Of a stretch of DNA of 64,000 nucleotides, positions 39,001 to 58,741 are shown one piece after another; the first letter of the stretch is position 1, and each line of letters opens with the position of its first letter. A program made the position numbers and the translations under genes. The notes under the pieces were generated by a model. It worked only from the letters and a program-made list of their open reading frames with translations, searched no databases and had not been told where the DNA came from. The stretch is from Dimorphilus gyrociliatus (taxonomy: Eukaryota; Animalia; Annelida), in assembly GCA_904063045.1 (NCBI GenBank), contig CAJFCJ010000002.1:1324422-1388421 (forward strand), given 5' to 3'.

Positions 39001-39499
39001 AAGAAAATTTCAATAATTCTAATTGGAAGATCTAAGTGGGGTTTCTTTATTACAAATTGAATTAATTCTAACACTATATATATTTATAATTTATTCATAA
39101 ATCTAATAGAAATTATATAATAGAGAAATAATCTTTAATATTTATCAATTGTCTTTTATCGTAAATAAAACTAATCATTCTGGTAGTTTTAGTCCCCACT
39201 TTCTCTAATATTCAAAACTCATCTAACAGCTGCAAAAACTGTACTATATGTTTCTGTAAAAATTAAAAAAAAAAGAAAAAAGAAACAATAGGCCTAATAA
39301 TTGTAATAACATCTTGTCTAAACATTATCATCTTGAAACACCGTTATATACATTAAGCTATTATTATTACTATTATACTGTATATGCATATAACTTTTTG
39401 CATTATACAAGAGAAAATCGTTGTATAAGTTTATATAAACCAAAGTAAAAATCGGTTAGTACAATCCGATGAAAATGTACAAGAATTGATTTGCTACTT

Positions 39500-39504
<5 letters not shown>

Positions 39505-39550
<46 letters not shown>
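39505..39550. repeat. (CT)n microsatellite
   Basis: Direct read. Confidence 0.95.
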
Positions 39551-39556
<6 letters not shown>

Positions 39557-40657
39557 TTACTTTAGCAAAGGATTTGCTAAAGAGAGCGTAGGGAGAGAAT
39601 TTTACTATAAAAAACAAGACAAAAAGAGAGAGAAAGAGATAGAGAGAGAATTAATAGGAAAATAATAGTTATACTTACTAAACCGGTCTGAACGAGTTGA
39701 TTAACAACCCAAATAAAAAAAGAGAATAAAAAGGAAAAAGCGAACGAATTAAGGATAATTACATATGTCGCCCACTTTATTCTATACGCTTTTTTTTTTA
39801 TTCACTCATTTATTCATTCATTCAACAGTTTTAGTTATAAAGTTATCATTTTTTTATTATATATACCATTTATTAAATGATATACCACATCTACTATATC
39901 TATAATACTCCCTTTAATAATAACGTACAAAATTATAGACGTATTATCCCTTGATAGAATGATACATTGTTCTAATTTGCGAGTGCTAGATATTTTCAAA
40001 TGTTTGTGGTTTTGTTTGTCTTTATTAGGTACAATTAATTAAGGCCTAAACCTCGTAAATAATTAAAGAAAATTACCTATTTTTTCCCCTTTTTTTCCCC
40101 AATTTAGCAAAATAGTGTGATCAACTTAATTTAATATATATTAACTACAAAAAACATAACAATCAGTATGTATCATCTATATATTAGAGATAGAGTATAT
40201 ACATTATATTCAATATATTGAATGTGCATCCATTTAAATAAATACATGCACCACAAGTGTATTAAAAATATTATCAACAACGAAAGCAACGACAGATTTA
40301 TACAACGCGGACGGAGAATGTTAACTGCATAACTGGAGACAAATTAATATCACAGGATCACATCAAGGGTAAAATGATGAACATTGTAATAATAAAACAA
40401 TAGAAAATAAAGAAAGAAAGAAAGAAAGAAAGAAAATGAATGAAAATACTGATTCTTCTTAATTTTAAAATATCTATATATTTATCACTTGCAAAGTCAC
40501 CTTTTCATTTTGCACTCTTTTTCATACGCACAAACTAACTTATACAGAGAGAGAAACTATTACTATTTTACTTCTTTTCTACTCTCTGTCTCTTTGTCTC
40601 TCACGCGCTCTCTCTCTTTGATTACTCCTTTGAGTTATCTTTTATTTTTATCTTTTT

Positions 40658-43600
40658 CTACAAAATTGTACAGACAGTGCACCGCGGAATATGAACTTGT
40701 TCAACTTGTCTTCTATTGCCAACTTCTGAACTGTTTCTAAACTCTTCGGCATTATATAGGTTTACCCTCCTGGACGGACGGCGATATTCTTGAATGAGAA
40801 CTTTCGAATGAGGTACATCAATGTCTTGATCCTCTTCCATTGGTGGTGGAGAACGTATATGTGATGGTAGAGCGTGTCTGGAAATTCTTTGAACAATTTC
40901 TCGATATTTTTCCTCTAAATCAGCGTGAACTCCGCATCCACCGTGTCCTCCTATTCCCTCAAGGTCTATATATACTAGTTGAGCTAGGAGTAGAGCCATC
41001 GAGCCTGGCGGTGGCCAAGGTACTGAACGAATTAAGACAGGTACGATAGGTTTTCGAAGGAGATCGGCCAAATTTAATTCTCTTTGGCAATAGTGAGAAA
41101 CGATAAACCTTGGCGAAATGCAGGCAAGAACAACTTTGCAATTACGTATACCTCTATCAATTTTAGCGTATAATTGATCGCCTCCCCCCATCTGACCAAT
41201 ATCCATCCAGCAGGAAAAGCCACACTTTTCGAGACGATCCCTTATTGCTTTGACGTCGTCCTGGGATTCCCATTCATAACTTATGAACACTTGTGGTGAA
41301 GGACTATCATTTTCTATTAGTGAAGGGGAAGAAAAGACTCATAAATTAGGAATAAATGATTCTAATTGAAACGCATCATAGGGAGAAATCCCATATCGAT
41401 CAGCTTACCTTGTCCTTTATGAATGATATCTACAATATCATCTCTTTTCATTTGCTCTAAGCAAGATACGATCATGTCAACTGATAAAGCTGTATTTCCC
41501 GAACTTATTAACCAGTCTAATAGCAAAGCAAGGCCGGGGTTTAAGTCATCATTAAAACGATCCATTTTGGATCTTTTATATCCCAATCTCTTGCCGAGCG
41601 ACGACCAGTCTTGTCCTTCACCTCCTCCGTTTAATAATTTTGCAGCACTCTTTACCCATTGAGGAACTTCAGTGTTTTTAGCTTCACTATGCTTCTTTAA
41701 TAATTCATAATCTTGAGTTATAGACTTTGATAAAATTGGTCCCATACGCTCTTCAACAATAGCTGGAAACCACTTTCGAAATTGACCAGTCTTTATACGA
41801 CGATGTTCACACGATACAACTTTTGACGCTAGACATTCGTCTAAATCAAGGAAATGCATGCATTGTACCTGTTTACAACGCGAATCCCCATGATAATAGC
41901 ATGGTTTATCACACGGACATTGAACGACACATCTGTAACTTAATCTTCTTAACCAAGTACCTTTTATCTCGGACAATGTAGTTTCCAAGAAATTTCTTAC
42001 TTTTGCATTAGCCGTTGACTTTGGTTGTAAAATGGTCTTTTGTCTTTCGGCGCTCTCCTCTGCGTCCATTGTTCTAATAACAGCAATAGTAATTCTTGAA
42101 GGATTTTCACTGTTGGGCATTTCTAGGCAAAAATCATGTTCACTATCTAAGTATAATCTAGCTTGGCGACGAAAGAGTTTCGGTGAGTATGAGCTGGATG
42201 ATTGAGACCAACGAATTGATCTAACTAATATGCGATTAAAAACACTTTCCGGTAGAAATCCATTAAAGTCGTAATAAAACCGAACGTCATTGGTAGATAC
42301 TGGATTATATAATTTACTGTTACTCAATGGTAACTTACAAGGAACTATATACGATTTCCCTATTTTAACACTATCGCCGTTTAACTGTTTTTTTAATAAA
42401 ACACAGGAATTAATTAATAAAACTCATTATCAATTAAATCATATTATTTTAATTACCGATGCAGCCTTTGATGGAACACTTCTACAAATCAGATCAAATT
42501 TCTCTAATAAACCCAACAAAGCAGGTATTTGCTGGCTAACATCTTGCGCAACTTCACTTATTAGGCGTTCGTCTAAAACACCCTGATTTTCAAGTTTTGC
42601 AGCGTATTGTTCATTAGCATCTGACACGTAGGCGTTACAGTCGATCAAGCGTTCAAACATATCGATAAGCCATTGAGGTTGTAGAATTATAATAGAATTT
42701 AGAGTAGAATCTAGCGATGTCAGCGAACCGAAATACAAAATAGAGCCAACATCGTGTAAAAAATGTAGTAGAGTGTAAAGTTCTTCAACACTCTCGACGT
42801 CGTATTCGTTAGCCAACCGTTTCATTTGTTCAAACGTTATAAAATATATACCCTCCTCCACCTTTTCGTATAATTGACTTTCAATTTTTAACCAACGACT
42901 GGGCGTCTCTTCCCCCATATACTCTTCATTTAAAGCAACTTTCTCTATATGCTTTTTCAGGTTGCCGATCTGTTTTAAAAATAGTAATTATTGATCGCTA
43001 CTAGGGTAACGCCGACGTCATTTACCTCTTTGTCGTTTGCTAGATCGTTGTCGACGGCATAATATTTTGGCACAATGTGGTTGGCGTAATGTTTACTTTG
43101 AACCATTTCCTCAATTCTACCGAATTCCTCGTCGGCCTATAACGAAAGGTCAAATAAATAAGGACACAGTCGGTCGTAAATCTTCCGAGATTAAATACTA
43201 CGTAATGGAAAAAATAGTCCTTCAGTTTATGCATTCTTACGAAAAGGAAAGCCTATATAAACCTAGCTTATCAATCGATAAGAATCGATCTACTTAAAAA
43301 CAAGAGGGAATGAGGGAAAGATAGATAGAGAGAAGGAGGAAAAGAAAATATTTTTGATTTTTAAACTTACAAGTTTTATTCTTTTCGTTCCGTCATCGTC
43401 TAACTGATTCCTATGAGTTCCAACAATAAATACTGGAGGGGATAAAGATGAATCGCCTGTCTTTGAATTTTCCGCCGTGTACAAATGTATCATTCTTAGC
43501 CAGTAATCAACGGAAGCCTGTTCACAAAAAAAAAGAAAAAAATCAATCATTCAGGGTTTTTTTTTTTAATTCAACATTTCGATTCTTTCTGTTCTTCAAT

Positions 43601-45054
43601 AAGTAATAGAAAATCTTTTTCCCACTTACATTTACTTTCTGTCTATCCTTTTCATTATCGACTAGTTTGCAAACGACAATATACACTGCTCTCGGAGTAA
43701 GAAATATCTACAATTAACACCATAAACACTTATTAGATCCAATACAAGAATTTGCTAATATTAATTTACTTGATGAGATGCGTAATACGTATTTCCTCCA
43801 GCAAAGTCCCATATGTTTAGAACTACGTCGTCCTCATCTACATCGTCGTTCTTCTCCTCCGTCCTACCACTTTCGGCCAATAAACGCTCTACCAAAGTGG
43901 CAACTCTCTCTGTTACATCCGTTAATAGTGCAGATGTTTCGACATCGTCCAAATAGGACGATTGAGTATTTTTTGTATCCTCTAAATGTTTATCTTGACC
44001 CTTATCCCTATTAGACTCACTGATTAACTGTTCATTTAGACGTCGTTTGAATATTAGTTCTTGGACGATATTCGAAGCAATAGCATAATTATACTCCTCT
44101 TCTAATATTTCCGTCGGTGTTATTTTCCTGGGTGAAGGTGAGTGAGGTGACTGAAGCCAAGGTTTGCCTTTCGATATGGCCAGTTTCCAAGAAGAACCCT
44201 CCCGTAGCGAAAAGGAGCATGATGCCGACAAATCGATTCCATGCGTTCTTTCTTCTCTTGAGCTATGCCTATTGTAATGAAAAGAGAGAAGAAAATTACA
44301 TGCATATATGTATATAGAATATTTTCAAGTTGCCCTGGTAACATTTTTTTTTCTTACAAGCTGTCTGTGTATATTATTAACGTATTTTTTTACTGAATAC
44401 TTACTTTATACCAAGTAAGGAATTCTTTAAACTCGTCTTTCCTACTCCCTCACCTCCCACTATCATTAATCTCGTCCTATACACCGCTTCGGTGCCATCT
44501 TCGCAAGCAGAATGAAATTGTTGAATTGCGTCTGGTCCCCTAGCCACTATTTCTGCAGGTGCCTCCTCTCCACTTTGAAATTCCAAACCAATAACATCAC
44601 CAAATAATTCAAATATCATCCACATAGATCTGCTACTTGGTAGCTTAGCCAAAAGAGAACCTTTGTGTAGTCCACCGACCATATAATGTAGAACTCCCCT
44701 AGAATTTACATAAAATGTTACTGTGTCGAACGTTCTTGTATTTGTTGGCGGTAAGGCTTTCATCCAAAAACCTTCTTTGTTCGATAAATTAGGACACGAA
44801 AACTTTGGTAGATTTTCAGCTCGAAGAGTTTTCGGATCATGAATAGTTAATCCAACACGAAGAGTTCCAACAGATTTTAAGTTCGTTCTTATTAATCTTA
44901 ATCGAATCCTTTGACCAATATTTATTGGATGTGACGTAAAAACTATACCGTGACCCAATTGATTAATATCTCTCTCAACGATCGAATAATTCTGCTTTGA
45001 ATAGACGGCCGACGAATGTACATGATGAAAACGCATGCCGGCCGTCAACTTCAT
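40658..45054 (-). CDS. ROCO-family protein: Neuralized (NHR) - Roc GTPase - COR - Death domain - TIR - CaaX
   Basis: Exons: 45054-44405, 44268-43770, a short exon near 43710-43635, ~43518-43372, ~43136-43027, ~42972-42462, ~42380-41409 and 41313-40658. Motifs: NHR (FHHVH, GIVFTSHPI, LRVGLTIHDP, FWMKALP), P-loop GGEGVGKTS, THGID, WDFAG, GTHRN, COR (PSRWLKIE, LHFLHDVGSILYF, LQPQWLI, YIVPCKL), Death (DWSSLGKRLG...LLLDW...DIVDII), TIR (VFISY, WMDI, YCQREL..A), terminal CTIL. Confidence 0.88.
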
Positions 45055-46250
45055 ATTCTTTGGTGATTATTTCAACTATATCTACTTTCAAGGTAAAATC
45101 AACATTCTTCTTAACCTCACTCTCTCATTCGCATTAACCGCTACACCATTTCATTTATCGATCAGTTTACGACTAGCGACACCTGCGGTAGAGACGCAGT
45201 ACACTGCAACAATTAGGCCTATAAGTACCTTATTTCTTTCAAAAGTTTATTTAATATATATATATAGATATAGATATATATATACTGTATAAATTGTGTG
45301 AATGTGTGTGTGTGTACGTGTGCGTGTGAATATGCGGGTATTCAACTGGTGTTAATAATTTATCTTAAGGCTGTTGTTGTTGTTATTGTTATTGTCATTG
45401 TTTAAGAATTTATACTATTAAAAAATAAACAATAAGGTAAAGCATATTTTATTAATTATTGTATTTATCATTTTATTAATGTTATCAGGAAAAAAAGAGT
45501 GATAAACAACTTGTTGTAAATATTTGTAGGGATAATAAAAAGAGCGAAATTTTACATAAACAAACACAATTATCTTTTAATAATTTTATGTATAGGACTT
45601 CAAAGGAAGCTTATGCTAAATGTAATGAAGAAAGGGCGAGAGCGAAGTGTGTGGGGAGGAGGATGATGAGGAGAATGAGGACAGAGTGAAGGGGAAAGGG
45701 AATAGGAAGAGAGAGAGAGAGAGAATAAGTAATATTGAATAAATCAACATTATTGAAGTTAAATAGTTTATAAATATTAAAATATAAAAAATTGTATAAT
45801 CTTTTAGGATTATAAAAATTAGAATGTGAAATTTAATCAATAGTTTACAACCTAATTACGTGTCATGTTCCTTAAATTTTAATTAAAAATATCGATCTTT
45901 CATTCTATCCTACATTCAGATCTTGAATTAAAAGCTCTAATAAATATCTCTATATATTATTATTATTGTATAAATAGTATACGTTATTACATACTGTATA
46001 TTTATATAGAATGTTATCGCCCATAATAAAAATGTATAATTGATAAAGACTTCTCTCACTGCTTACGCATTTTCAAATTTCTATATAAATATTCAAATGT
46101 TTCTTTTATATCTCTTTTTCATATTTTGAATTATTAATGTAAAGAATGAGTTGTTAGAATTTTAATAATACTTGGCATAAATAGATTAATTTCTTCATTC
46201 AATTCAAGATATCTATCTATATACATATATATAATAATATTATTTTCTTA

Positions 46251-47026
46251 ATGGGACATTTTCAAAGATTTATATATCGTTATTTAAAGAAAGGTGATTT
46301 ATACGCCTTCTTCGTATTATGATTAATATAACTGTAAAACAAAATATAACAGTACTAACAACTGAAGAATATGAAACGTGAGTTTTTAAATTGACGTACT
46401 ATTTGATATTTTCTCCATTCTTTAATTGTCAAGAAAGAGAAAGAATCATACTTATTAGGCACGTGAAATGAAATTTTTTTTTCTTTTTTCTAGTTATTGA
46501 CTTTTCTAAGAAATTAAAAAAAAACCTCTTAATAACTTCCTTGTATATACTACGCTTCTTTGAAATGACAAATGACACAAATCTTAATACGTTATAATCG
46601 TCTATTAATCATTAGTTAGCAAAAATTTTTTCCTTTTTTAATTTTAGGAACGTTTTAGAGCCTACAAAGCTTCTAATAATAGTCATCGTCGTTCTTGGAT
46701 CGATATTTATGGTCTTGTGCATTTGCTTTATATGGAAATTAGACGCCTGCTGTCACCTTTATGAAAAAGACTGCGGTAGAGGATTTTTTCAAACACGTCA
46801 TCATTTTCCTACACACAAGTCTGGACATCAGTCTCGCTTCATCTCTGATTCGAACTTTGATACTATTAACAATGGAAAACAAGTTACAGTTTTTGAGGAA
46901 AACTGGCAAACCAATCAATTTATAGAACCATCGAAACGTCAAATAAAACGTCAGAAATCCGATGAAAGAACAATTAGCAGTCGCGAACCTTCGTGGCCTA
47001 CTGTTGTTGTTGTGAAACTAAAATAA
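46251..47026 (+). CDS. Small single-pass membrane protein (~148 aa), unknown family
   Basis: Phase-consistent exons 46251-46293, 46353-46377 and 46648-47026 give MGHFQRFIYRYLKKVLTTEEYETNVLEPTK-LLIIVIVVLGSIFMVLCICFIW-KLDACCHL... The terminal exon with the TM helix is the best supported. Confidence 0.55.
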
Positions 47027-47287: not shown

Positions 47288-50200
47288 TTACAAAAATGGA
47301 TTGAGCGAAGTTTTTGAGCACTGAATATGCGATATCGCACCATTCGGAAAACGAACGCAGGTTGGCTCATCAAATATCCTGTTGCAGACGTCGCAAACTC
47401 TGAAAAACGAAATAAAAAAGGCAAATTAGAAATGTTAAACAAACTTAAAAAAAAAACAAATATGCATATGCATGAATAATCTTTTTGGTTGTTTTTTTTT
47501 TTACTTCAACTAACTGATTATCTGATATAGTGATTGAAGTTTGTTGTTCGTGGAAAACTCTTGATTTTACTTGTAGATGTTGCCTCCTAGCCAACATTCT
47601 ATGAATTCTGGACGTTCTACTCCCATGCAAATGTCGCCTTATAGAACTCGACAAAAAGGATGATATAAGACCTATAGACAAATTTTCCGGTAATTGTTGT
47701 AAAACTCGAACAGGATCAAACTCTGCAGGATGCTTGTTAAGTAACGATATTGTCGGTCCAATTAAATTATCAATTTTCCTATGGAAAAATATATATTTCT
47801 GTACAGTTTCTTGAATGGAAAATCAAAGCGCTTACTCATATTTAGCATCTAAATATACTTGGAGTAGTGAATGAAAGAGATAACGTCTAGATTCAATATC
47901 TCGACCTTTTGCATACATTTCACAATATTCTTCAGCAGCTACAAAATCTCTCTGCTTGTGAACTAGTAGCTTTAAAGCTCTTTCGTGCTCCTCTAGCTGT
48001 TTGTTAATGTAAGAAAAAAGGGTAACAGTTTTTTAATTTCTCTAAAAGAAAATAGATATTTTACCTTTCCATATAAAATTGCCATTTCAGTATACATATC
48101 GGTATTTTTTAATTTTCCAAGGATTAAATGAACACGAAAGAGACTGGATTCTCGTAATATTCTTTGAAAATCTTTTCTATTTTTAAATATATGTATATAA
48201 TATTGTTCAAGAATAATTTTTATTTTATAATATTTACCTAGCGCTTACTAATTCTGTATTTGTTGATAATTTATAAGTTGATGTCTCGGTCGAGTCACCT
48301 CTGATCTTCAAAACTCTCTCGAGATATAAAGCCGCTAAATGGGTATGATACCTCTCTTCCTAAGTACATAAAAAGGATTTAAGAGAGATTAATTTTTACA
48401 ATTTCAAAAGAGGTAAATCCTACTTTCGTTTCTTGCTTAAATACTAAATGCTCTAAATATGTGGTAACAGCTCGATTATACGGTAGAAGGAGATCAATTA
48501 TAGAATCTGCCAAAAATAAATCAGATTGTGGATACTTTTCTTGTCGTTGAATGATAATCTAAAAATTTTATGCAAATTATTTGATTATGTTATATAACAA
48601 TTGATCTCTTTAAACTACTTTAACAGCCGAAATTGGATCTTTCTTCAAAGCCCATTCAAGGTAACTCCATACTAGTTCGTCTCCTTCAATCCTGAATAGG
48701 GAGGAAATGATAATATTAAATGAGAAGTGAAAGAAAATAAAACAAACTTTAATAAACAGTCTAAAACATATTCAATACCAGGAAACATTTCGTCTTCTAA
48801 TTCTCCATCCGCTATTCTGCGAAGGTTAAATGAAATGCGAAATTATATAAGAGGATAAATACTAAAGAAGAACATTAAAAGTAAATTACTTTGTCCAAAT
48901 ATCAAGGGCACTTGTCCAATTATTTTTTATACCGTATAAAAGTCCTAATGCGTAGTGTCTATTCCTATTCCTCAGCCAATCTATGCACTCATCGTGAAGC
49001 TGACGATTAGAGTTATCTAAAAATTTTATTAATTCTTCATAATTATTCTTTGCGTAGACTTTCAAAAGAGCAGTATCAGATTCCTATACAAAAGAAAGGT
49101 TATATTCAATTCAAGTACAAATTGTTAATTAATTATTTAACTAAATTAATATACCATTTTATATTGTTTATTAGAATCGTTCAATTCCATTGCGGTTAAT
49201 ATTTTACATAGAAATTCCTCATATAAGGAAATTTTTTCTGCATCTCCTTTACATAGTTGTAAAATGTCGGCAATTTCGTGAAGAGGTGGAATTGAACGAG
49301 AAAATTCATTGTCGGACGGTAAAAGATTTGGAAAAAGTATAATAAGCTATAGGTGAATAGTAAATAAAAATACAATTAAAGCATATGGTTCAATTTCACT
49401 AGTCTACCTCGCGACAATCCAATTTCGATTTCAAAAAGTATTTTGTTGAGTTTTCAAAATTCATGTTCGCAAATTCAATAAAACCAGCCATCAAAAGTAC
49501 TTTTTTCATTAACTGTAAGTATGGATAGTTTTAAGTTATTTTAACATCTCAATTTCATCTACGGCGACTGAGTAGTAAAATTCTTACTTTATGATATTTT
49601 TCCCCTGGTAATTGAACTTTTCCCATTACGCTCGTCAACTCCAAAGCTTCTTCTACTCTTCGATCACTTAACAGATCTTGGACCTTTAAACATTAAGGTT
49701 TTATTATCATTTATTAAACATATTATTTGTTTTTTTTTCTCATATATGCTAACCTGAGTCTCTAATGAAATAGGAACTAGAGCGAAAATTTGATAGTGGG
49801 TTGAAACCAAAATTTTGTCACCAAATTCTGCTATAAATTGACCTCCTTGAAAGGGTATACTCTGTTTTTGTTGTTGATCTAGAATACTAATTGTTAGGGA
49901 AAAAAGAAATAATGAATCTCATAATAGTGCTACTCAAAAGAAATATATTAACCTATGAATAGTAATAAATTCATCATTTAGAGCAAGAACGTATGGATAA
50001 GAACATACTACTGAAATAAGCGATTCACTCCACTGAAGAGGAGGTCTTTGTGACATTCCAGCCGTTGTAACAAACACTCCCAAGGCATTTGGACCATTTA
50101 TAAGGTATTCGTTCTAAAAGAAAGTCGCTTCGTTAAATATCAGCAATCGTATTTGTTTTAATAAGTTACATTTTTTATTAAAGTGATTAGCGGGTTTGTT

Positions 50201-51107
50201 CTTTCGTTTTGATAGGGGAATAAGTCTTGAACGGTAGAAGTTTCAGTGTTCATCATTATATACTGATCTTGAAGAGCAGCGCATATGTAGCTTGCATTCA
50301 TCGACTGAAAAATCATTGAATTCTACTTTTTTTATAATTCTCAATATTACATCCTATACTTACAATATACACAGAAGGCTGTTGTGTTGTAATTTCTTTT
50401 GTAACAAACACCCTATCTTCAGTTAGAGTATACACTTGTACCACTCTTTTCTTAAGTGCAATACATAGCTGTCAATGGATAGTTATTATACTTAAAGATT
50501 TAGAGTTAGATGAAAAATATACCTCGATACTGAAAGGATTCTTTCTAACGGGATTTGGATTTATACAAAAGCTGACAACACTCTTTATTTTACCCATTCC
50601 AACAACGGGTTCTAGAGGAAGCATATTCAACATCAACAAAGATTCATCACATAATACAAGTAATCTCTTCAGAGCCTTTGCTACATTCAGCTTTTCTATT
50701 GGCTTTTTCTGAAAGCAATTAACTATAATTAATAATTCCCCCTAAATTATTGATTATTACCAGGCCCAAGTATTTGTGTTCATGGCGTTCACTTTTAAAA
50801 GAGAGCCGGTTGTTTCTTCCTTTCACTTCTTCCAATAGATAATGTATAACATAGCTGTTTTAGATAAATCATTTAAAATAAGTCCTGAAATACATTATAT
50901 TTTTGTATTTACCAATCGTTAGTTCCTATAAATAAATTTTTATCACTGCATTCAATACATTCGATCTGCAATATTTTACGGATATAAGAATGCAAACGAA
51001 ATCATAAACAAATGGCATATATTGATGCAAACCTTGGATTTTGCTTTGTCAGATGCCGAGTTGAGTTTCTCTAGAGCAGGGTATATGTCATAAACTTTTA
51101 AACTCAT
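47288..51107 (-). CDS. TGFBRAP1: TGF-beta receptor-associated protein 1 (Vps3-like CORVET subunit; CNH, CHCR and Vps39_2/zinc-finger regions)
   Basis: The N-terminus MSLKVYDIYPALEK...K|IECIECSDKNLFIGTNDC and C-terminus VCDVCNRIFDEPTCVRFPNGAISHIQC match TGFBRAP1 (IECVECCGRDLYVGTNDC; CQICQNPFCEPVFVRYPNGGLVHTHC). Many short exons, too small for the ORF track. Confidence 0.88.
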
Positions 51108-55058: not shown

Positions 55059-55535
<477 letters not shown>

Positions 55536-55566
55536 CTACTTTTATGCTCAGTTTTGGCGCCAAAAG

Positions 55567-55626
55567 GTCACGTGACGTAGCGTCCTGCATGCTGATTGGT
55601 TATTCGGGAGAGCAAGATACCGACGA
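55567..55626. promoter_or_regulatory. Histone promoter module upstream of H3 (CACGTGAC - ATTGG - AGATACCGACGA)
   Basis: Motifs at 55569-55576, 55595-55599 and 55615-55626. The same module occurs upstream of H4 and between H2B and H2A. Confidence 0.75.
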
Positions 55627-56066
55627 GCAAATTTTTTGTAGCACGTTTTTTGAGGCATTGGGGTGACGACACTTAATTCTAGATTTTTGGCGCAATAATC
55701 AGTCATTAAACAATGTACACAATATATATACGTTTATATATTATTTAATAATTTAAATCACGTGATTAGACGCCCCGATATTATGAACGATACCTTAACC
55801 TTAAGGTAATAGCAACTGAAGAGTATAGCTTAGATATACTACTATAATAATGGCGGTCATTTTGTAATAGTACTTTTAATATAATATGAAAATTGAACAG
55901 GTATGATTTCTTTTATGATCAGTTTATTCAATCAGCTTAAAATTAACCAGTAACAAAGTTTTGAACATAATAGCATAAAAAATTTCAGTGTGAGTTTAAG
56001 ATGTTTACATGTTTAATAAATGTAAAATGGTTGTTTTTAGTTTAACATCTTTGGCAAAGATATGGT

Positions 56067-56082
56067 GGCCCTCAAAAGGGCC
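56067..56082 (-). terminator. Histone 3' stem-loop of H4
   Basis: Minus strand reads AAAAAC GGCCCTTTTGAGGGCC ACCATA, followed by CCAAAG ~12 nt downstream. Confidence 0.93.
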
Positions 56083-56115
56083 GTTTTTGTATATTCTTTA
56101 AAAGCAGGAACACAT

Positions 56116-56436
<321 letters not shown>

Positions 56437-56582
56437 TTATACCACAGTCGACGTTTACACTTCGAATGATGAGACCTGAGTGGTTTAGCCCAGTATTTAT
56501 AAGCAATCGAGAGCGCCAAATTGCGACCAATCAGAGACGTTACAATTTTACAACGGATTGTAAAGCTTCTCATTGGCTCGAT

Positions 56583-56641
56583 GTCACGTGACTTTTATCG
56601 CAACCCCTATTGGTCAATTCGCGAGAAGGAGATACAGACGA
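56583..56641. promoter_or_regulatory. Histone promoter module upstream of H4
   Basis: CACGTGAC 56585-56592, ATTGG 56609-56613, AGATACAGACGA 56630-56641. Confidence 0.75.
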
Positions 56642-57618
56642 GGTATGTTTAACGGAAACTTTCCCGATCAAACAAAGAAAGAGAAAATTCAAATGGTTAT
56701 AATAGAAAAAGTCGCATAACGCATGACTTTCCAAAGATAGTGGGTCTAATAAGAATCAGCAAACATTATAAAATATCCCAATAATAAAATAAACAAATTT
56801 CATTTTAATCGTAATTAATATTTTTATTAAAATTAAAGCATTACTATAAAATTAGGCATTATTATAATTACAGATGAAGGAATTTTAAAGATGCTTTACA
56901 TAAACGTAATTACGTAGGCTAAATCATAAATGTAAGATAAATCTCAGACTAAAATTCCTTTATTAAAAAGAAGTAGTTATCGCAAAAAAATGTGTGAAAC
57001 TAGTTGAGTATATTCTATGACACTGCTATAGATGGCACAATAGCATCAGTCGAAAGTTGAGAAAAAAGCGGTTACAAAATCTTTGTGTGCATTGTATGAT
57101 GTACAGTATATACAGTATATCCATATATTTTGAATATACAGTATTCTTTACGTAAATCAGAATAATATCTTACATGCTCAATAGGCCTAAAATGTTTAAA
57201 ATACAATATTATCTTGAGCTTTTATAGGACTAATTCCCAATTAGGATTTTATTGTATGTATAATCAACTGTTAATTCCATTTGCAAAAAATGTCTATCTG
57301 TCTGTCTGGTTTTGAATTAAAAGCTTATGAAGAAGATATGCAGTTTTTTTTAGACTATCGTCCTTATGTATATGTCTGTGTTTTAAGATATAGGACTAGT
57401 AAAATATTTCTCTTTATAAATGATTTATTAGTTTGTCACAATTCGTTATTATATGATACTAATATTTTAATATGAACATTTTACACTTGAATATGATATA
57501 TGCGAAATAAAAAGTACAATTTTAAAGGAATAATTGCAATTTTGTTCTATCATATTTGAAATTACAAAATGTCTGAATTATTATTCATTTTATCTTCTTA
57601 TCGTTTTTCTTTTGGGTT

Positions 57619-58002
57619 CTATTTAGCTGCGCTTGTATACTTGGTAACAGCCTTAGTACCTTCGGATACGGCATGCTTTGCTAATTCTCCAGGTAGAAGA
57701 AGACGAACTGCTGTCTGAATTTCTCTAGAGGTTATCGTGGATCTTTTATTATAATGGGCCAGTCTGGAGGCTTCGGCGGCAATTCTTTCGAAAATATCGT
57801 TCACGAACGAATTCATAATCGACATTGCCTTTGACGAAATACCCGTATCTGGATGAACTTGCTTAAGAACTTTATAAATGTAAATTGCATAAGATTCCTT
57901 TCTCTTTCTCTTCTTCTTCTTGTCGACGCTTTGTCTTGATTGACTCTTAGCTTTGGAGACGGCCTTTTTTGAGCCCTTCATAGCAACGGCTTTTGGCGGC
58001 AT
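57619..58002 (-). CDS. H2B: Histone H2B (divergent tail, no stem-loop)
   Basis: H2B fold ([26 protein letters not shown]...AVTKYTS). No stem-loop after the stop; AATAAA on the minus strand at 57429-57424. Confidence 0.98.
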
Positions 58003-58094
58003 AGTTGTTTAATTAATTAGCGATAATTTAATAATTTTACGTAATAGAGCAATATGCTGCTATGACAAAGCTATTTTCTTTTATTTTACGATTT

Positions 58095-58294
58095 ATGCAA
58101 ATTAGTTGTCTAAGTGTTCTCCAGTAATTTTCAACGCTTCTGATTGGCTGCCATAAGCGGCTCAATCATTCGCTACAGCCAGCCGGACGCTGATTGGCTG
58201 AAATTGTAAATTCAAAAGAAAAAAGAAATTTATTTACCACGTGACCAAATTAAAGGGCTCTTATTGGCTGAGTGGGAGGGAAAGATACAGACGA
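58095..58294. promoter_or_regulatory. Bidirectional H2B/H2A promoter: octamer, CCAAT boxes and shared histone module
   Basis: ATGCAAAT at 58095-58102; ATTGG near 58143, 58194 and 58263; CACGTGAC at 58238-58245; AGATACAGACGA at 58283-58294. Confidence 0.75.
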
Positions 58295-58369
58295 CGCTAG
58301 CGATAAAAGACTAGCATTCAGTTAGTCGATTTATTTTGAATTCACATCTCACCCTGAAAGTAAGAAAAC

Positions 58370-58741
58370 ATGTCTGGACGTGGAAAAGGTGGAAAAGCTA
58401 AGACCAAGAGCAAGACTCGTTCATCGAGAGCTGGGCTACAGTTTCCAGTCGGAAGAGTGCATCGTCATTTAAGAAAAGGAAATTATGCACAGAGAATTGG
58501 ATCTGGAGCACCCGTTTATCTATCAGCCGTCATGGAATACTTGGCCGCTGAAGTGTTGGAATTGGCGGGAAACGCAGCCAGAGACAACAAGAAATCTAGA
58601 ATCATCCCTAGACATCTCCAACTTGCAATCAGGAACGACGAAGAATTAAACAAGCTACTTAATGGTGTAACCATCGCTCAAGGAGGAGTACTACCCAACA
58701 TCCAAGCAGTCTTATTGCCCAAGAAAACCACAAAAGAATAA
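58370..58741 (+). CDS. H2A: Histone H2A (variant-like, no stem-loop)
   Basis: H2A fold ([12 protein letters not shown]...KGNY...[15 protein letters not shown]). No SQ(E/D) motif and no stem-loop; AATAAA at 58862-58867. Confidence 0.98.

What the first reader, a model, noticed from the sequence alone, without database searches (positions are those of the whole stretch)
40658..45054. ROCO protein with an unusual NHR-Roc-COR-Death-TIR-CaaX architecture: candidate GTP-gated innate-immune/cell-death signalling module
Seen: one spliced ORF carries a Neuralized homology repeat, a Roc GTPase with a ~150-aa insert between THGID and WDFAG, COR, a death domain (~41670-41409), a TIR domain (~41290-40930) and a terminal CTIL. 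Established: characterised ROCOs (LRRK1/2, DAPK1, MFHAS1, Dictyostelium Roco) use LRR/ankyrin sensors and usually a kinase output; NHR is a peptide-binding module; death and TIR domains nucleate signalling assemblies. Inference: NHR is the sensor, Roc-COR is a dimerisation switch, and Death+TIR replace the kinase as output, giving a kinase-free immune ROCO. I know of no characterised protein with this architecture, though uncharacterised relatives may exist in other invertebrates.
Basis: partly seen in the sequence, partly recalled or inferred. Interest (0 to 1): 0.88.

Follow-up and report, generated by a model that had tools for sequence, protein, structure and literature searches.

The report
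Conserved NHR-ROCO-Death-TIR prenylated signalling gene
This is a real, transcribed gene for a 1209-residue GTPase-switch protein that carries a death domain, a TIR domain and a lipid-anchor motif; it belongs to an ancient invertebrate family that nobody has studied at the bench, so it is a good lead but not a new kind of protein.

Summary
An 8-exon gene on the minus strand (45054-40658, all introns GT..AG) encodes 1209 aa. The domain order is Neuralized-homology repeat, Roc with a ~135-aa insert between switch I and G3, COR-A/COR-B, a p75NTR-like death domain, a TIR_2 domain, and C-terminal CTVCTIL. One spliced RNA contig crosses at least six of the seven introns, so the NHR and TIR parts lie on one transcript. 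A close marine variant differs at 31 synonymous and 2 non-synonymous sites.

The architecture is not unique. At least 60 proteins show the same domain order, from nemerteans, annelids, molluscs, rotifers, flatworms, priapulids, myriapods, chelicerates, echinoderms, hemichordates and amphioxus. Their tree roughly follows the species tree. Among the named hits I saw no vertebrate, insect, nematode or cnidarian member. The CxxCaaL end is present in 17 of the 18 family proteins listed that have a complete C-terminus.

Two immunome surveys (2016, 2022) noted the architecture in passing. I found no functional study.

Best reading: a prenyl-anchored, nucleotide-gated Death+TIR signalling scaffold. 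Whether the TIR cleaves NAD+ is open. Verdict: new member of a known but uncharacterised kind. The scan did not report this family on other DNA, although the same genome has other ROCO-TIR genes.

The parts
44405..45054 (-). Coding exon 1. Start ATG is at 45054; a second ATG at 45036 matches where orthologues start (MRFH). Encodes the NHR, the pre-Roc linker helix and the Roc P-loop.
   Evidence: alignment; RNA contig
45055..45205 (-). 5' UTR part of exon 1. Stops occur in all three frames and there are several short uORFs. The acceptor lies at about 45205.
   Evidence: read directly; RNA contig piece 44404-45205
46759..46788 (-). 3' end of an upstream non-coding exon, spliced to 45205. It lies about 530 nt downstream of the stop of the Vps39-like gene.
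   Evidence: loose end of the X3 contig, located in the window
44584..45030 (-). Neuralized homology repeat (aa 9-157).
   Evidence: Pfam PF07177 1.9e-28; Drosophila Neuralized NHR1 2yue 8e-23
44431..44457 (-). Roc G1 / P-loop, GGEGVGKTS (aa 200-208).
43770..44268 (-). Coding exon 2. Contains switch I THGID (44232-44246), the ~135-aa interswitch insert (43827-44231) and G3 DFAG (43797-43808).
   Evidence: Roc hit
43630..43707 (-). Coding exon 3 (Roc).
   Evidence: joint 43707/43770
43371..43517 (-). Coding exon 4 (Roc). G4 reads THRN at 43407-43418, with Asn446 where LRRK2 has Asp.
   Evidence: weak alignment of the Tubulanus orthologue P0001 to LRRK2 VGTHLD
43026..43136 (-). Coding exon 5 (end of Roc).
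42457..42969 (-). Coding exon 6. COR-A is aa 518-661 (42472-42903).
   Evidence: Pfam PF16095 5.8e-21
41409..42384 (-). Coding exon 7. Contains COR-B (about 41755-42384), a conserved Cys/His cluster (41803-41919) and the death domain (41419-41637).
40658..41313 (-). Coding exon 8. Contains the TIR_2 domain (40958-41287), invariant Glu1070 (41078-41080), the GGHGGCG motif (40931-40951), a low-complexity tail, CTVCTIL (40661-40681) and the stop (40658-40660).
40449..40657 (-). 3' UTR, at least this far.
   Evidence: RNA contig piece 40449-41313

Best explanation
This is the orthologue, in a spiralian animal, of an ancient bilaterian gene that has never been studied at the bench. The protein order is NHR, Roc-COR, death domain, TIR, then a CxxCaaL end.

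Shown: it is one transcribed gene under purifying selection, all domains are present, and the family and its lipid-anchor motif are conserved across phyla.

Inferred mechanism:
1. The C-terminal CaaX (X = Leu) is geranylgeranylated and the nearby Cys may be palmitoylated. This would hold the TIR end on a membrane.
2. Roc-COR acts, as in other ROCO proteins, as a nucleotide-dependent dimerisation and conformation switch.
3. The switch state would control whether the adjacent death and TIR domains can oligomerise and recruit death-domain and TIR partners. The protein would then be a switchable, membrane-bound adaptor, not an enzyme cascade.
4. The N-terminal NHR binds a short peptide motif, either in the cytoplasmic tail of a membrane partner (the input) or on the protein's own Roc domain (autoregulation).
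For: Gene and transcript:
- Splice model.
- One RNA contig spliced at the predicted introns from exon 1 to exon 8.
- 31 synonymous against 2 non-synonymous differences to a close variant.

Domains:
- Pfam.
- NHR matches Neuralized NHR1 at 8e-23.
- Roc-COR of the Tubulanus orthologue P0001 matches M. barkeri and C. tepidum Roco and LRRK2, including the pre-Roc EIV.(Q/R)G helix.
- The exon-7 model has pLDDT 86. Its COR-B part matches the C. tepidum COR domain and LRRK1/2. Its death domain matches NRADD/p75NTR at rmsd 1.6 A. DAPK1 matches across both parts.
- The TIR model core has pLDDT above 90 and matches TIR structures.

Family:
- The same architecture appears in more than 60 proteins from about ten phyla.
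- The tree roughly follows the species tree, with a Spiralia clade at 99/98 support.
- 17 of the 18 family proteins listed that have a complete C-terminus end in C-x-x-C-a-a-[L/I/V]; the related ROCO outgroups do not.
- TIR is the most conserved part, at 55-69% identity.

Partner logic: NEURL4 NHR domains bind the LRRK2 ROC domain in a way that is sensitive to nucleotide state (PMC4565672).
Against: - No functional datum exists for any family member.
- The G4 position that reads the guanine base is Asn, not Asp, in the window protein and most orthologues. GTP binding is therefore not certain.
- Some orthologues have a degenerate P-loop: Sinanodonta has VEKTS and Parasteatoda has GPPD-GKKA.
- The TIR is closer in sequence to NAD-cleaving bacterial TIRs than to the MyD88/TLR adaptor TIRs. 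A purely scaffolding role is therefore not the only reading.
- Prenylation is predicted from the motif alone.
- An immune role rests on domain types. The only expression hint is one transcript isoform annotated 'neuralized pats1' that went down in clam QPX lesions (PMC4769524).
Confidence: 0.5

Rival explanations
1. NADase executioner. The TIR domain is an enzyme that cleaves NAD+, as in SARM1, bacterial AbTir and SPARTA. Roc-COR, with death-domain clustering at the membrane, gates its self-association. The protein would then be a GTPase-controlled NAD+-depletion or cyclic-ADPR signalling switch, not an adaptor.
For: - The best PDB sequence matches of the TIR exon are bacterial NADase TIRs: 7uxr at 6e-8, PdTIR 3h16, and AbTir 7uwg/8g83.
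- Glu1070 (QRELN) aligns with the Glu of AbTir NYELD and is invariant in 18 of 18 family TIRs.
- The BB-loop is of the W.D....GGD.L type, not the RDxxPG of TLR/MyD88.
- The top Foldseek hits are SARM1, the SPARTA TIR and AbTir.
- The Pfam model that fits is TIR_2, not TIR.
Against: - The aromatic residue four positions before the Glu is not conserved. It is Trp in AbTir and, from my own knowledge, in SARM1 and plant TIRs. Here it is Tyr in the window protein and Ile, His, Leu, Ser or Val in orthologues.
- The Foldseek E-values for the non-enzymatic TIRs (Hydra TRR-2, TLR15, MyD88) are within about one order of magnitude of SARM1.
- The conserved Glu also occurs in TLR TIRs that are not enzymes (my own knowledge).
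Confidence: 0.25
2. Not primarily immune. The protein may be a neuronal, developmental or trafficking regulator. The NHR would bind Delta-like or Bearded-like tails, as in Neuralized. The death domain is of the p75NTR/NRADD type. The ROCO core would work on endomembranes, as LRRK2 does with NEURL4 and HERC2.
For: - The NHR is closest to Drosophila Neuralized NHR1.
- The death domain is closest to p75NTR/NRADD, not to MyD88 or IRAK.
- The LRRK2-NEURL4 axis regulates Delta trafficking (PMC4565672).
- The gene tree roughly follows the species tree, with mostly one protein per species among the hits. That pattern suits a housekeeping signalling gene better than an expanding immune receptor family.
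Against: - Death plus TIR together are otherwise a hallmark of innate-immune adaptors.
- The family is missing from the named hits of vertebrates, insects and nematodes, which is unusual for a core developmental gene.
- There are no expression data by tissue.
Confidence: 0.2
3. Gene-model artefact. The NHR-Roc part and the Death-TIR part would be separate neighbouring genes, joined only by prediction or by a chimeric assembly.
For: The same RNA contig also runs on into the upstream Vps39-like gene. Contigs of this run can therefore join neighbouring transcripts.
Against: - Every junction from exon 1 to exon 8 is a canonical in-frame splice with no stop.
- Six of the seven are listed in the RNA contig; the seventh falls among rows the tool did not print.
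- The identical domain order is annotated independently in more than 60 proteins of about ten phyla.
- By contrast, the Vps39 link passes through stops in all frames and is not syntenic elsewhere.
Confidence: 0.02

Closest known systems
Uncharacterised invertebrate NHR-Roc-COR-Death-TIR proteins. Examples: Tubulanus XP_074643355, Saccoglossus 'neuralized PATS1', and Aplysia LOC101861518, which PMC9334734 calls a MyD88-like protein with a ROCO domain.
   Same: - Same domain order from end to end.
- 40-52% identity overall, and 55-69% in the TIR.
- Same Roc insert, same Cys/His cluster and same CxxCaaL end.
   Different: Nothing qualitative. The window protein has six extra residues before the shared MRFH start, Gly instead of Gln after DFAG, and a shorter tail.
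DAPK1 (death-associated protein kinase 1)
   Same: Roc-COR followed directly by a death domain. DAPK1 is the only Swiss-Prot fold hit that covers both COR-B and the death domain of the exon-7 model.
   Different: - This protein has no kinase, calmodulin-binding or ankyrin region.
- It has an NHR in front, and a TIR plus CaaX behind.
- Identity is only about 14% in the structural alignment.
MyD88
   Same: A death domain followed by a TIR domain in the same order. Both are interaction modules that could nucleate assemblies.
   Different: - The death domain is closest to p75NTR/NRADD.
- The TIR fits TIR_2 and bacterial TIRs.
- The BB-loop lacks RDxxPG.
- The module hangs on a ROCO GTPase and a lipid anchor.
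SARM1 and bacterial TIR NADases (AbTir, PdTIR, SPARTA TIR)
   Same: - They are the nearest TIR sequences and folds.
- The catalytic-position Glu is invariant.
- The WP.P loop after strand D resembles SARM1 WPEP (the SARM1 motif is from my own knowledge).
   Different: - There are no ARM or SAM domains.
- The Trp four residues before the Glu is not kept.
- A family-specific GGHGG(S/C)G loop follows strand E.
LRRK2 with NEURL4
   Same: A Roc domain and NHR domains work together. In mammals they bind in trans, and binding depends on the nucleotide state of Roc (PMC4565672).
   Different: Here the two are fused in one chain. The protein has no LRR, kinase or WD40 domains. Whether this NHR touches this Roc is not tested.

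Membership tests
ROCO proteins | Roc GTPase domain immediately followed by COR | tested here: met
   - COR-A scores 5.8e-21 on the window exon.
- Roc scores up to 2.4e-16 in full-length orthologues.
- The COR-B fold matches the C. tepidum Roco COR domain and LRRK1/2.
- Roc-COR of the Tubulanus orthologue P0001 matches M. barkeri Roco2 at 5.5e-19.
ROCO proteins | Intact nucleotide-binding motifs: G1 GxxxxGK[ST], G3 DxxG, G4 THxD | tested here: inconclusive
   G1 (GGEGVGKTS) and G3 (DFAG) are intact. G4 reads THRN, with Asn where LRRK2 has Asp. The G4 alignment itself is sub-threshold.
DAPK1 family | N-terminal Ca/calmodulin-regulated kinase and ankyrin repeats before Roc-COR-Death | tested here: not met
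   No kinase or ankyrin hit appears on any exon or in any orthologue. Only the Roc-COR-Death order is shared.
MyD88 | MyD88-type death domain, and a TIR with the Box 2 RDxxPG motif | tested here: not met
   - The best death-domain matches are p75NTR/NRADD.
- The BB-loop reads DIGQMGGGD.
- The TIR fits PF13676 at 2e-25 but PF01582 only at 1e-3.
TIR NADases (SARM1 / AbTir type) | Catalytic glutamate in helix C | tested here: met
   Glu1070 aligns with the Glu of AbTir NYELD and is invariant in 18 of 18 family members.
TIR NADases (SARM1 / AbTir type) | Conserved aromatic (Trp) four residues before the glutamate | tested here: not met
   The residue is Tyr1066 in the window protein and Ile, His, Leu, Ser or Val in orthologues.
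TIR NADases (SARM1 / AbTir type) | NAD+ hydrolase or cyclase activity | not testable with these tools
   This needs an enzyme assay.
Neuralized E3 ligases | NHR domain(s) plus a C-terminal RING finger | tested here: not met
   The NHR is present. No RING hit appears on any exon or orthologue.
CaaX-prenylated proteins | Cys four residues from the C-terminus, with aliphatic a-a and X = Leu for GGTase-I | tested here: met
   The protein ends CTIL then a stop. C-x-x-C-a-a-[L/I/V] is present in 17 of the 18 family proteins listed that have a complete C-terminus. The modification itself is not testable here.
ecTIR-DC classes of Gerdol et al. 2017 | Assignment to one of the published conserved TIR-domain-containing classes | not tested
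   The paper is not in the held library. Papers that cite it describe such classes as widespread in invertebrates and absent from vertebrates.

The most novel reading that the evidence does not exclude
The family is a lipid-anchored ROCO switch that gates an enzymatically active TIR. It would be a GTPase-controlled NAD+-cleaving death or signalling module, functionally parallel to SARM1. It would date to the bilaterian ancestor and would have been lost in vertebrates, insects and nematodes. Its Roc domain may also have altered base specificity, because the G4 Asp is naturally Asn. In Ras-like GTPases that change is known to shift preference from guanine towards xanthine nucleotides.
Probability: 0.18. 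Interest if true: 0.8.

Novelty: new member of a known kind. Interest (0 to 1): 0.5.

Why it matters
ROCO proteins (LRRK2, DAPK1) and TIR/death-domain adaptors (MyD88, SARM1) are central to Parkinson's disease, cell death and innate immunity. Here the two systems are fused in one chain, and the fusion has been kept for more than half a billion years across most invertebrate phyla.

I found no member in the standard genetic models (vertebrates, flies, nematodes). That probably explains why the family has never been studied.

This analysis adds several concrete handles for a first functional study:
- a near-invariant CxxCaaL lipid-anchor motif;
- a structured insert between the Roc switches;
- a conserved Cys/His cluster in COR-B;
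- an invariant catalytic-position Glu in the TIR;
- a GGHGG(S/C)G loop after the TIR core;
- a natural Asn at the G4 position.

The cis fusion of NHR and Roc also supports the reported NEURL4-LRRK2 interaction, in the manner of a Rosetta-stone fusion.

Tried and rejected
- The spliced 1209-aa protein has no reference, so I could not hand it to the search, fold or family tools. I searched domains exon by exon and on orthologues. The full protein was used only inside scripts.
- One search failed on the residue limit. One search failed on the wrong frame. Both were corrected and re-sent.
- A PDB search with the 49-aa exon 4 gave only noise. The G4 alignment to LRRK2 came from a sub-threshold second segment and is weak.
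- Gerdol et al. 2017 (the ecTIR-DC classification) is not held, so I could not check the class assignment.
- I tested the idea that the upstream Vps39-like gene is a conserved partner. It is absent from the flanks in Tubulanus and Didymodactylos, so I rejected the idea.
- A Vps39-ROCO fusion protein is rejected. All three frames are closed between 45205 and 45055, and Vps39 has its own stop at 47288-47290.
- Reads could be laid only once (cap). The region above 45400 was therefore not examined with reads, and the true 5' end is open.
- No inter-domain contacts could be read from the models, because only pLDDT and secondary structure are returned.
Full report
**1. What is in the sequence**

On the minus strand, six large open frames between 45054 and 40658 carry the expected domains. 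Pfam gives Neuralized 1.9e-28, a Roc fragment, COR-A 5.8e-21, COR-B (weak) plus Death 1.7e-8 (34.9 bits against a gathering score of 22.6), and TIR_2 2e-25.

Reading the strand and joining the frames by script gives eight coding exons:
- 45054-44405
- 44268-43770
- 43707-43630
- 43517-43371
- 43136-43026
- 42969-42457
- 42384-41409
- 41313-40658

Every intron is GT..AG. The phases fit. The product is 1209 aa with a single terminal stop.

THGID is aa 225-229 and WDFAG is aa 370-374. The protein ends CTVCTIL.

**2. Is it one transcript, and is it under selection?**

Three public runs hold the locus. In run X3, a 7199-nt contig lies on the locus in pieces. Their ends coincide with the predicted exon ends at 41313/41409, 42384/42457, 42969/43026, 43135/43370, 43707/43770 and 44267/44404. 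The joint for the remaining intron (43629-43518) is not in the listed output, because the tool withheld five piece rows. The NHR exon and the TIR exon are thus on the same spliced molecule, as far as a contig can show.

A metatranscriptome (X1) holds a variant that is 95-99% identical. Of its 33 differences inside the CDS, 31 are synonymous and 2 are conservative replacements, over 1965 coding nt. This is strong purifying selection and confirms the frame in five exons.

The X3 contig continues 5' of the start codon. Exon 1 extends to about 45205 and is spliced to an exon that ends at 46759. About 3.1 kb more contig follows.

That upstream region is a separate gene on the same strand, about 51100 to 47288. 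It has CNH, Vps39_1 and zf-Vps39_C hits and its own stop at 47288-47290. Between 45205 and 45055 all three frames are closed and there are short uORFs. No fusion protein is made.

Three explanations remain for the link: overlapping UTRs, read-through, or an operon-like transcript. Vps39 is not a neighbour of the orthologues in Tubulanus or Didymodactylos.

**3. Relatives**

I ran an exhaustive HMMER search with exon 7 (COR-B plus Death). It found 21 proteins below 1e-30, most of them 1000-1300 aa long.

Pfam scans show the same Neuralized, Roc, COR-A, Death, TIR_2 order in essentially all complete ones.

Names and a second search with the Tubulanus protein place them in these groups:
- nemerteans (Tubulanus, Lineus)
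- annelids (Owenia, Paralvinella)
- many molluscs
- a rotifer (Didymodactylos)
- a flatworm (Macrostomum)
- Priapulus
- myriapods (Strigamia, Chamberlinius)
- chelicerates (ticks, mites, spiders, Limulus)
- echinoderms
- hemichordates (Saccoglossus, where RefSeq calls it 'neuralized PATS1', and Ptychodera)
- amphioxus

Every name is 'uncharacterized' or automatic. None of the named hits is from a vertebrate, tunicate, insect, crustacean or nematode. The only cnidarian hit (Porites) is a weak match to a ROCO with a different architecture. This is absence from a hit list, not proof of loss.

A maximum-likelihood tree of 19 family members and 6 other invertebrate ROCOs broadly follows the species tree. 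It shows a Spiralia clade that contains the window protein (99/98 support), an arthropod clade, an echinoderm branch, and amphioxus next to the outgroups. The gene is therefore an orthologue inherited from the bilaterian ancestor, and the window comes from a spiralian.

**4. Anatomy from the family alignment**

Identity to the window protein by region:

| Region | Identity |
|---|---|
| TIR | 55-69% |
| Death | 34-75% |
| Roc (C-terminal half) / COR | 24-45% |
| NHR | 25-39% |
| Roc insert | 18-33% |

Features that stand out:

(a) The C-terminus is C-x-x-C-a-a-[L/I/V] in 17 of the 18 family proteins listed that have a complete C-terminus. The outgroup ROCOs lack it. With X = Leu this is the GGTase-I type of CaaX (established knowledge). 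The second Cys is a candidate palmitoylation site (inference).

(b) The insert between switch I and G3 is about 135 aa. It is present in all members and also in the related invertebrate ROCOs, where the P-loop to DxxG distance is about 150-200 residues. Prokaryotic Roco and LRRK2 lack it. Inside it, an EEEY..A..NIV.E motif and a P.RVV..V motif are conserved.

(c) The helix before Roc (EIVARGP.A...F) aligns with the LRR-Roc linker of prokaryotic Roco.

(d) G1 and G3 are intact in the window protein. G4 reads THRN, with Asn at the position of the LRRK2 THLD Asp, in the window protein and most orthologues. Asp remains in Physella and Ornithodoros. The alignment of this short segment is weak.

(e) A Cys/His cluster, C-P-C-x3-C-x2-H-x4-C-x4-C-x-H-x6-C-x7-C-x-H (aa 822-860), is nearly invariant and also present in the outgroups. 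It lies inside a confidently modelled part of COR-B (pLDDT about 89-96). Zinc binding is an inference.

(f) In the TIR, these residues are invariant: F, S, Y and W of strand A; CWMD; the GGD of the BB-loop; Glu1070; WPPPG; and a GGHGG(S/C)G loop after strand E. That last loop is modelled with low confidence and I have no explanation for it.

**5. Domain identities against solved and predicted structures**

- NHR: Drosophila Neuralized NHR1, 8e-23.
- Roc-COR (tested with the Tubulanus orthologue P0001): M. barkeri Roco2, C. tepidum Roco, LRRK2 and LRRK1.
- Exon-7 model (pLDDT 86): residues 1-210 match COR domains of C. tepidum Roco, LRRK1/2, MFHAS1 and Dictyostelium Rocos. Residues 240-324 match NRADD/p75NTR death domains at rmsd 1.6-2.7 A. 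Human and C. elegans DAPK1 are the only Swiss-Prot entries aligned across both parts. By sequence, too, the death domain is nearest to p75NTR/NRADD, not MyD88.
- TIR by sequence: the nearest solved chains are bacterial NADase TIRs (7uxr, PdTIR, AbTir, Cat1). Glu1070 lies on the AbTir NYELD glutamate.
- TIR by fold: SARM1, the SPARTA TIR, Hydra TRR-2 and AbTir lead. TLR15 and MyD88 are close behind.

**6. How it most likely works**

Shown: a conserved single chain that joins a peptide-binding NHR, a ROCO switch, two oligomerising signalling domains and a lipid-anchor motif.

Inferred:
- The CaaX end tethers the TIR to a membrane.
- Roc-COR changes dimer or conformation state with its nucleotide, as in other ROCOs.
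- That change licenses death-domain and TIR assembly.
- The NHR supplies the input. It could bind a tail motif of a membrane protein, as Neuralized NHR1 binds Delta (cited in PMC4565672). Or it could bind the Roc domain itself. NEURL4 NHR3-4 binds the LRRK2 ROC domain, and more strongly in GTPase-impaired mutants (PMC4565672).

The main rival is that the TIR is an NADase. In favour are the nearest relatives, the invariant Glu and the BB-loop type. Against is the loss of the Trp four residues upstream.

A non-immune role (neuronal or trafficking) cannot be excluded. The gene tree roughly follows the species tree with mostly one protein per species among the hits, which is unlike expanding immune receptor families.

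**7. What is already known**

- PMC5094078 (2016) noted, from the Pfam architecture tables, a 'neuralized' domain with Death and TIR_2 in Strigamia and Crassostrea.
- PMC9334734 (2022) figured Aplysia TIR-and-COR proteins in a legend that lists NHR, ROC, COR, Death and TIR. It grouped one of them with MyD88-like proteins and suggested a novel GTPase-TLR cascade.
- PMC6321704 and PMC8662601 refer to conserved invertebrate-only TIR classes defined by Gerdol et al. 2017, which I could not read.
- A clam RNA-seq study lists a 'neuralized pats1' transcript isoform as strongly down in QPX lesions (PMC4769524).
- I found no biochemical, cellular or genetic study.

**8. Verdict**

It misses the DAPK1-like Roc-COR-Death logic and the possibility that the NHR regulates Roc.

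The gene is a new member of a known but uncharacterised family. Its value lies in the family as a whole: an old fusion of ROCO, Death and TIR that I did not find in the model organisms, now with concrete conserved features to test.

Two earlier notes of this scan report other ROCO-TIR genes in the same genome, one of them also ending in CaaX. I did not examine them.

Noticed in passing
window 47288-51100, minus strand: A Vps39/Vam6-like gene lies directly upstream on the same strand. It has CNH, Vps39_1 and zf-Vps39_C hits. Its stop is at 47288-47290.
   Followed up: yes
window 45205-46759, minus strand: The RNA contig of run X3 joins the ROCO gene to the region just downstream of Vps39 through a 1553-nt GT..AG intron. 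The link could be overlapping UTRs, read-through or an operon-like transcript. It could not be resolved because reads could be laid only once.
   Followed up: partly
window 45055-45205, minus strand: The 5' UTR carries several short upstream ORFs. ATGs at 45154 and 45149 are each followed within a few codons by a stop, and there are two more further on. An in-frame TAA lies 15 nt before the start codon.
   Followed up: no
window 40931-40951, minus strand (aa 1113-1119): A GGHGG(S/C)G glycine-rich loop just after the TIR core is almost invariant across phyla but modelled with low confidence. It has no counterpart that I know of in other TIR families.
   Followed up: partly
window 41803-41919, minus strand (aa 822-860): A conserved Cys/His cluster sits inside COR-B and is shared with other invertebrate ROCOs. 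It may be a zinc site. Many short database fragments match just this stretch.
   Followed up: partly
window 55059-58741: A histone quartet: H3 (55059-55475, minus), H4 (56116-56427, minus), H2B (57619-58002, minus) and H2A (58370-58741, plus).
   Followed up: no
window 39486-39665 and 45690-45720: (GA)n/(CT)n microsatellites flank the gene. The intergenic DNA is very AT-rich (22-30% G+C), against 35-40% in the exons.
   Followed up: no
window 41177-41209: Run X3 has a second contig that matches only about 30 nt inside the TIR exon and then runs on unlike sequence on both sides. It may come from a paralogous TIR gene of the same organism.
   Followed up: no
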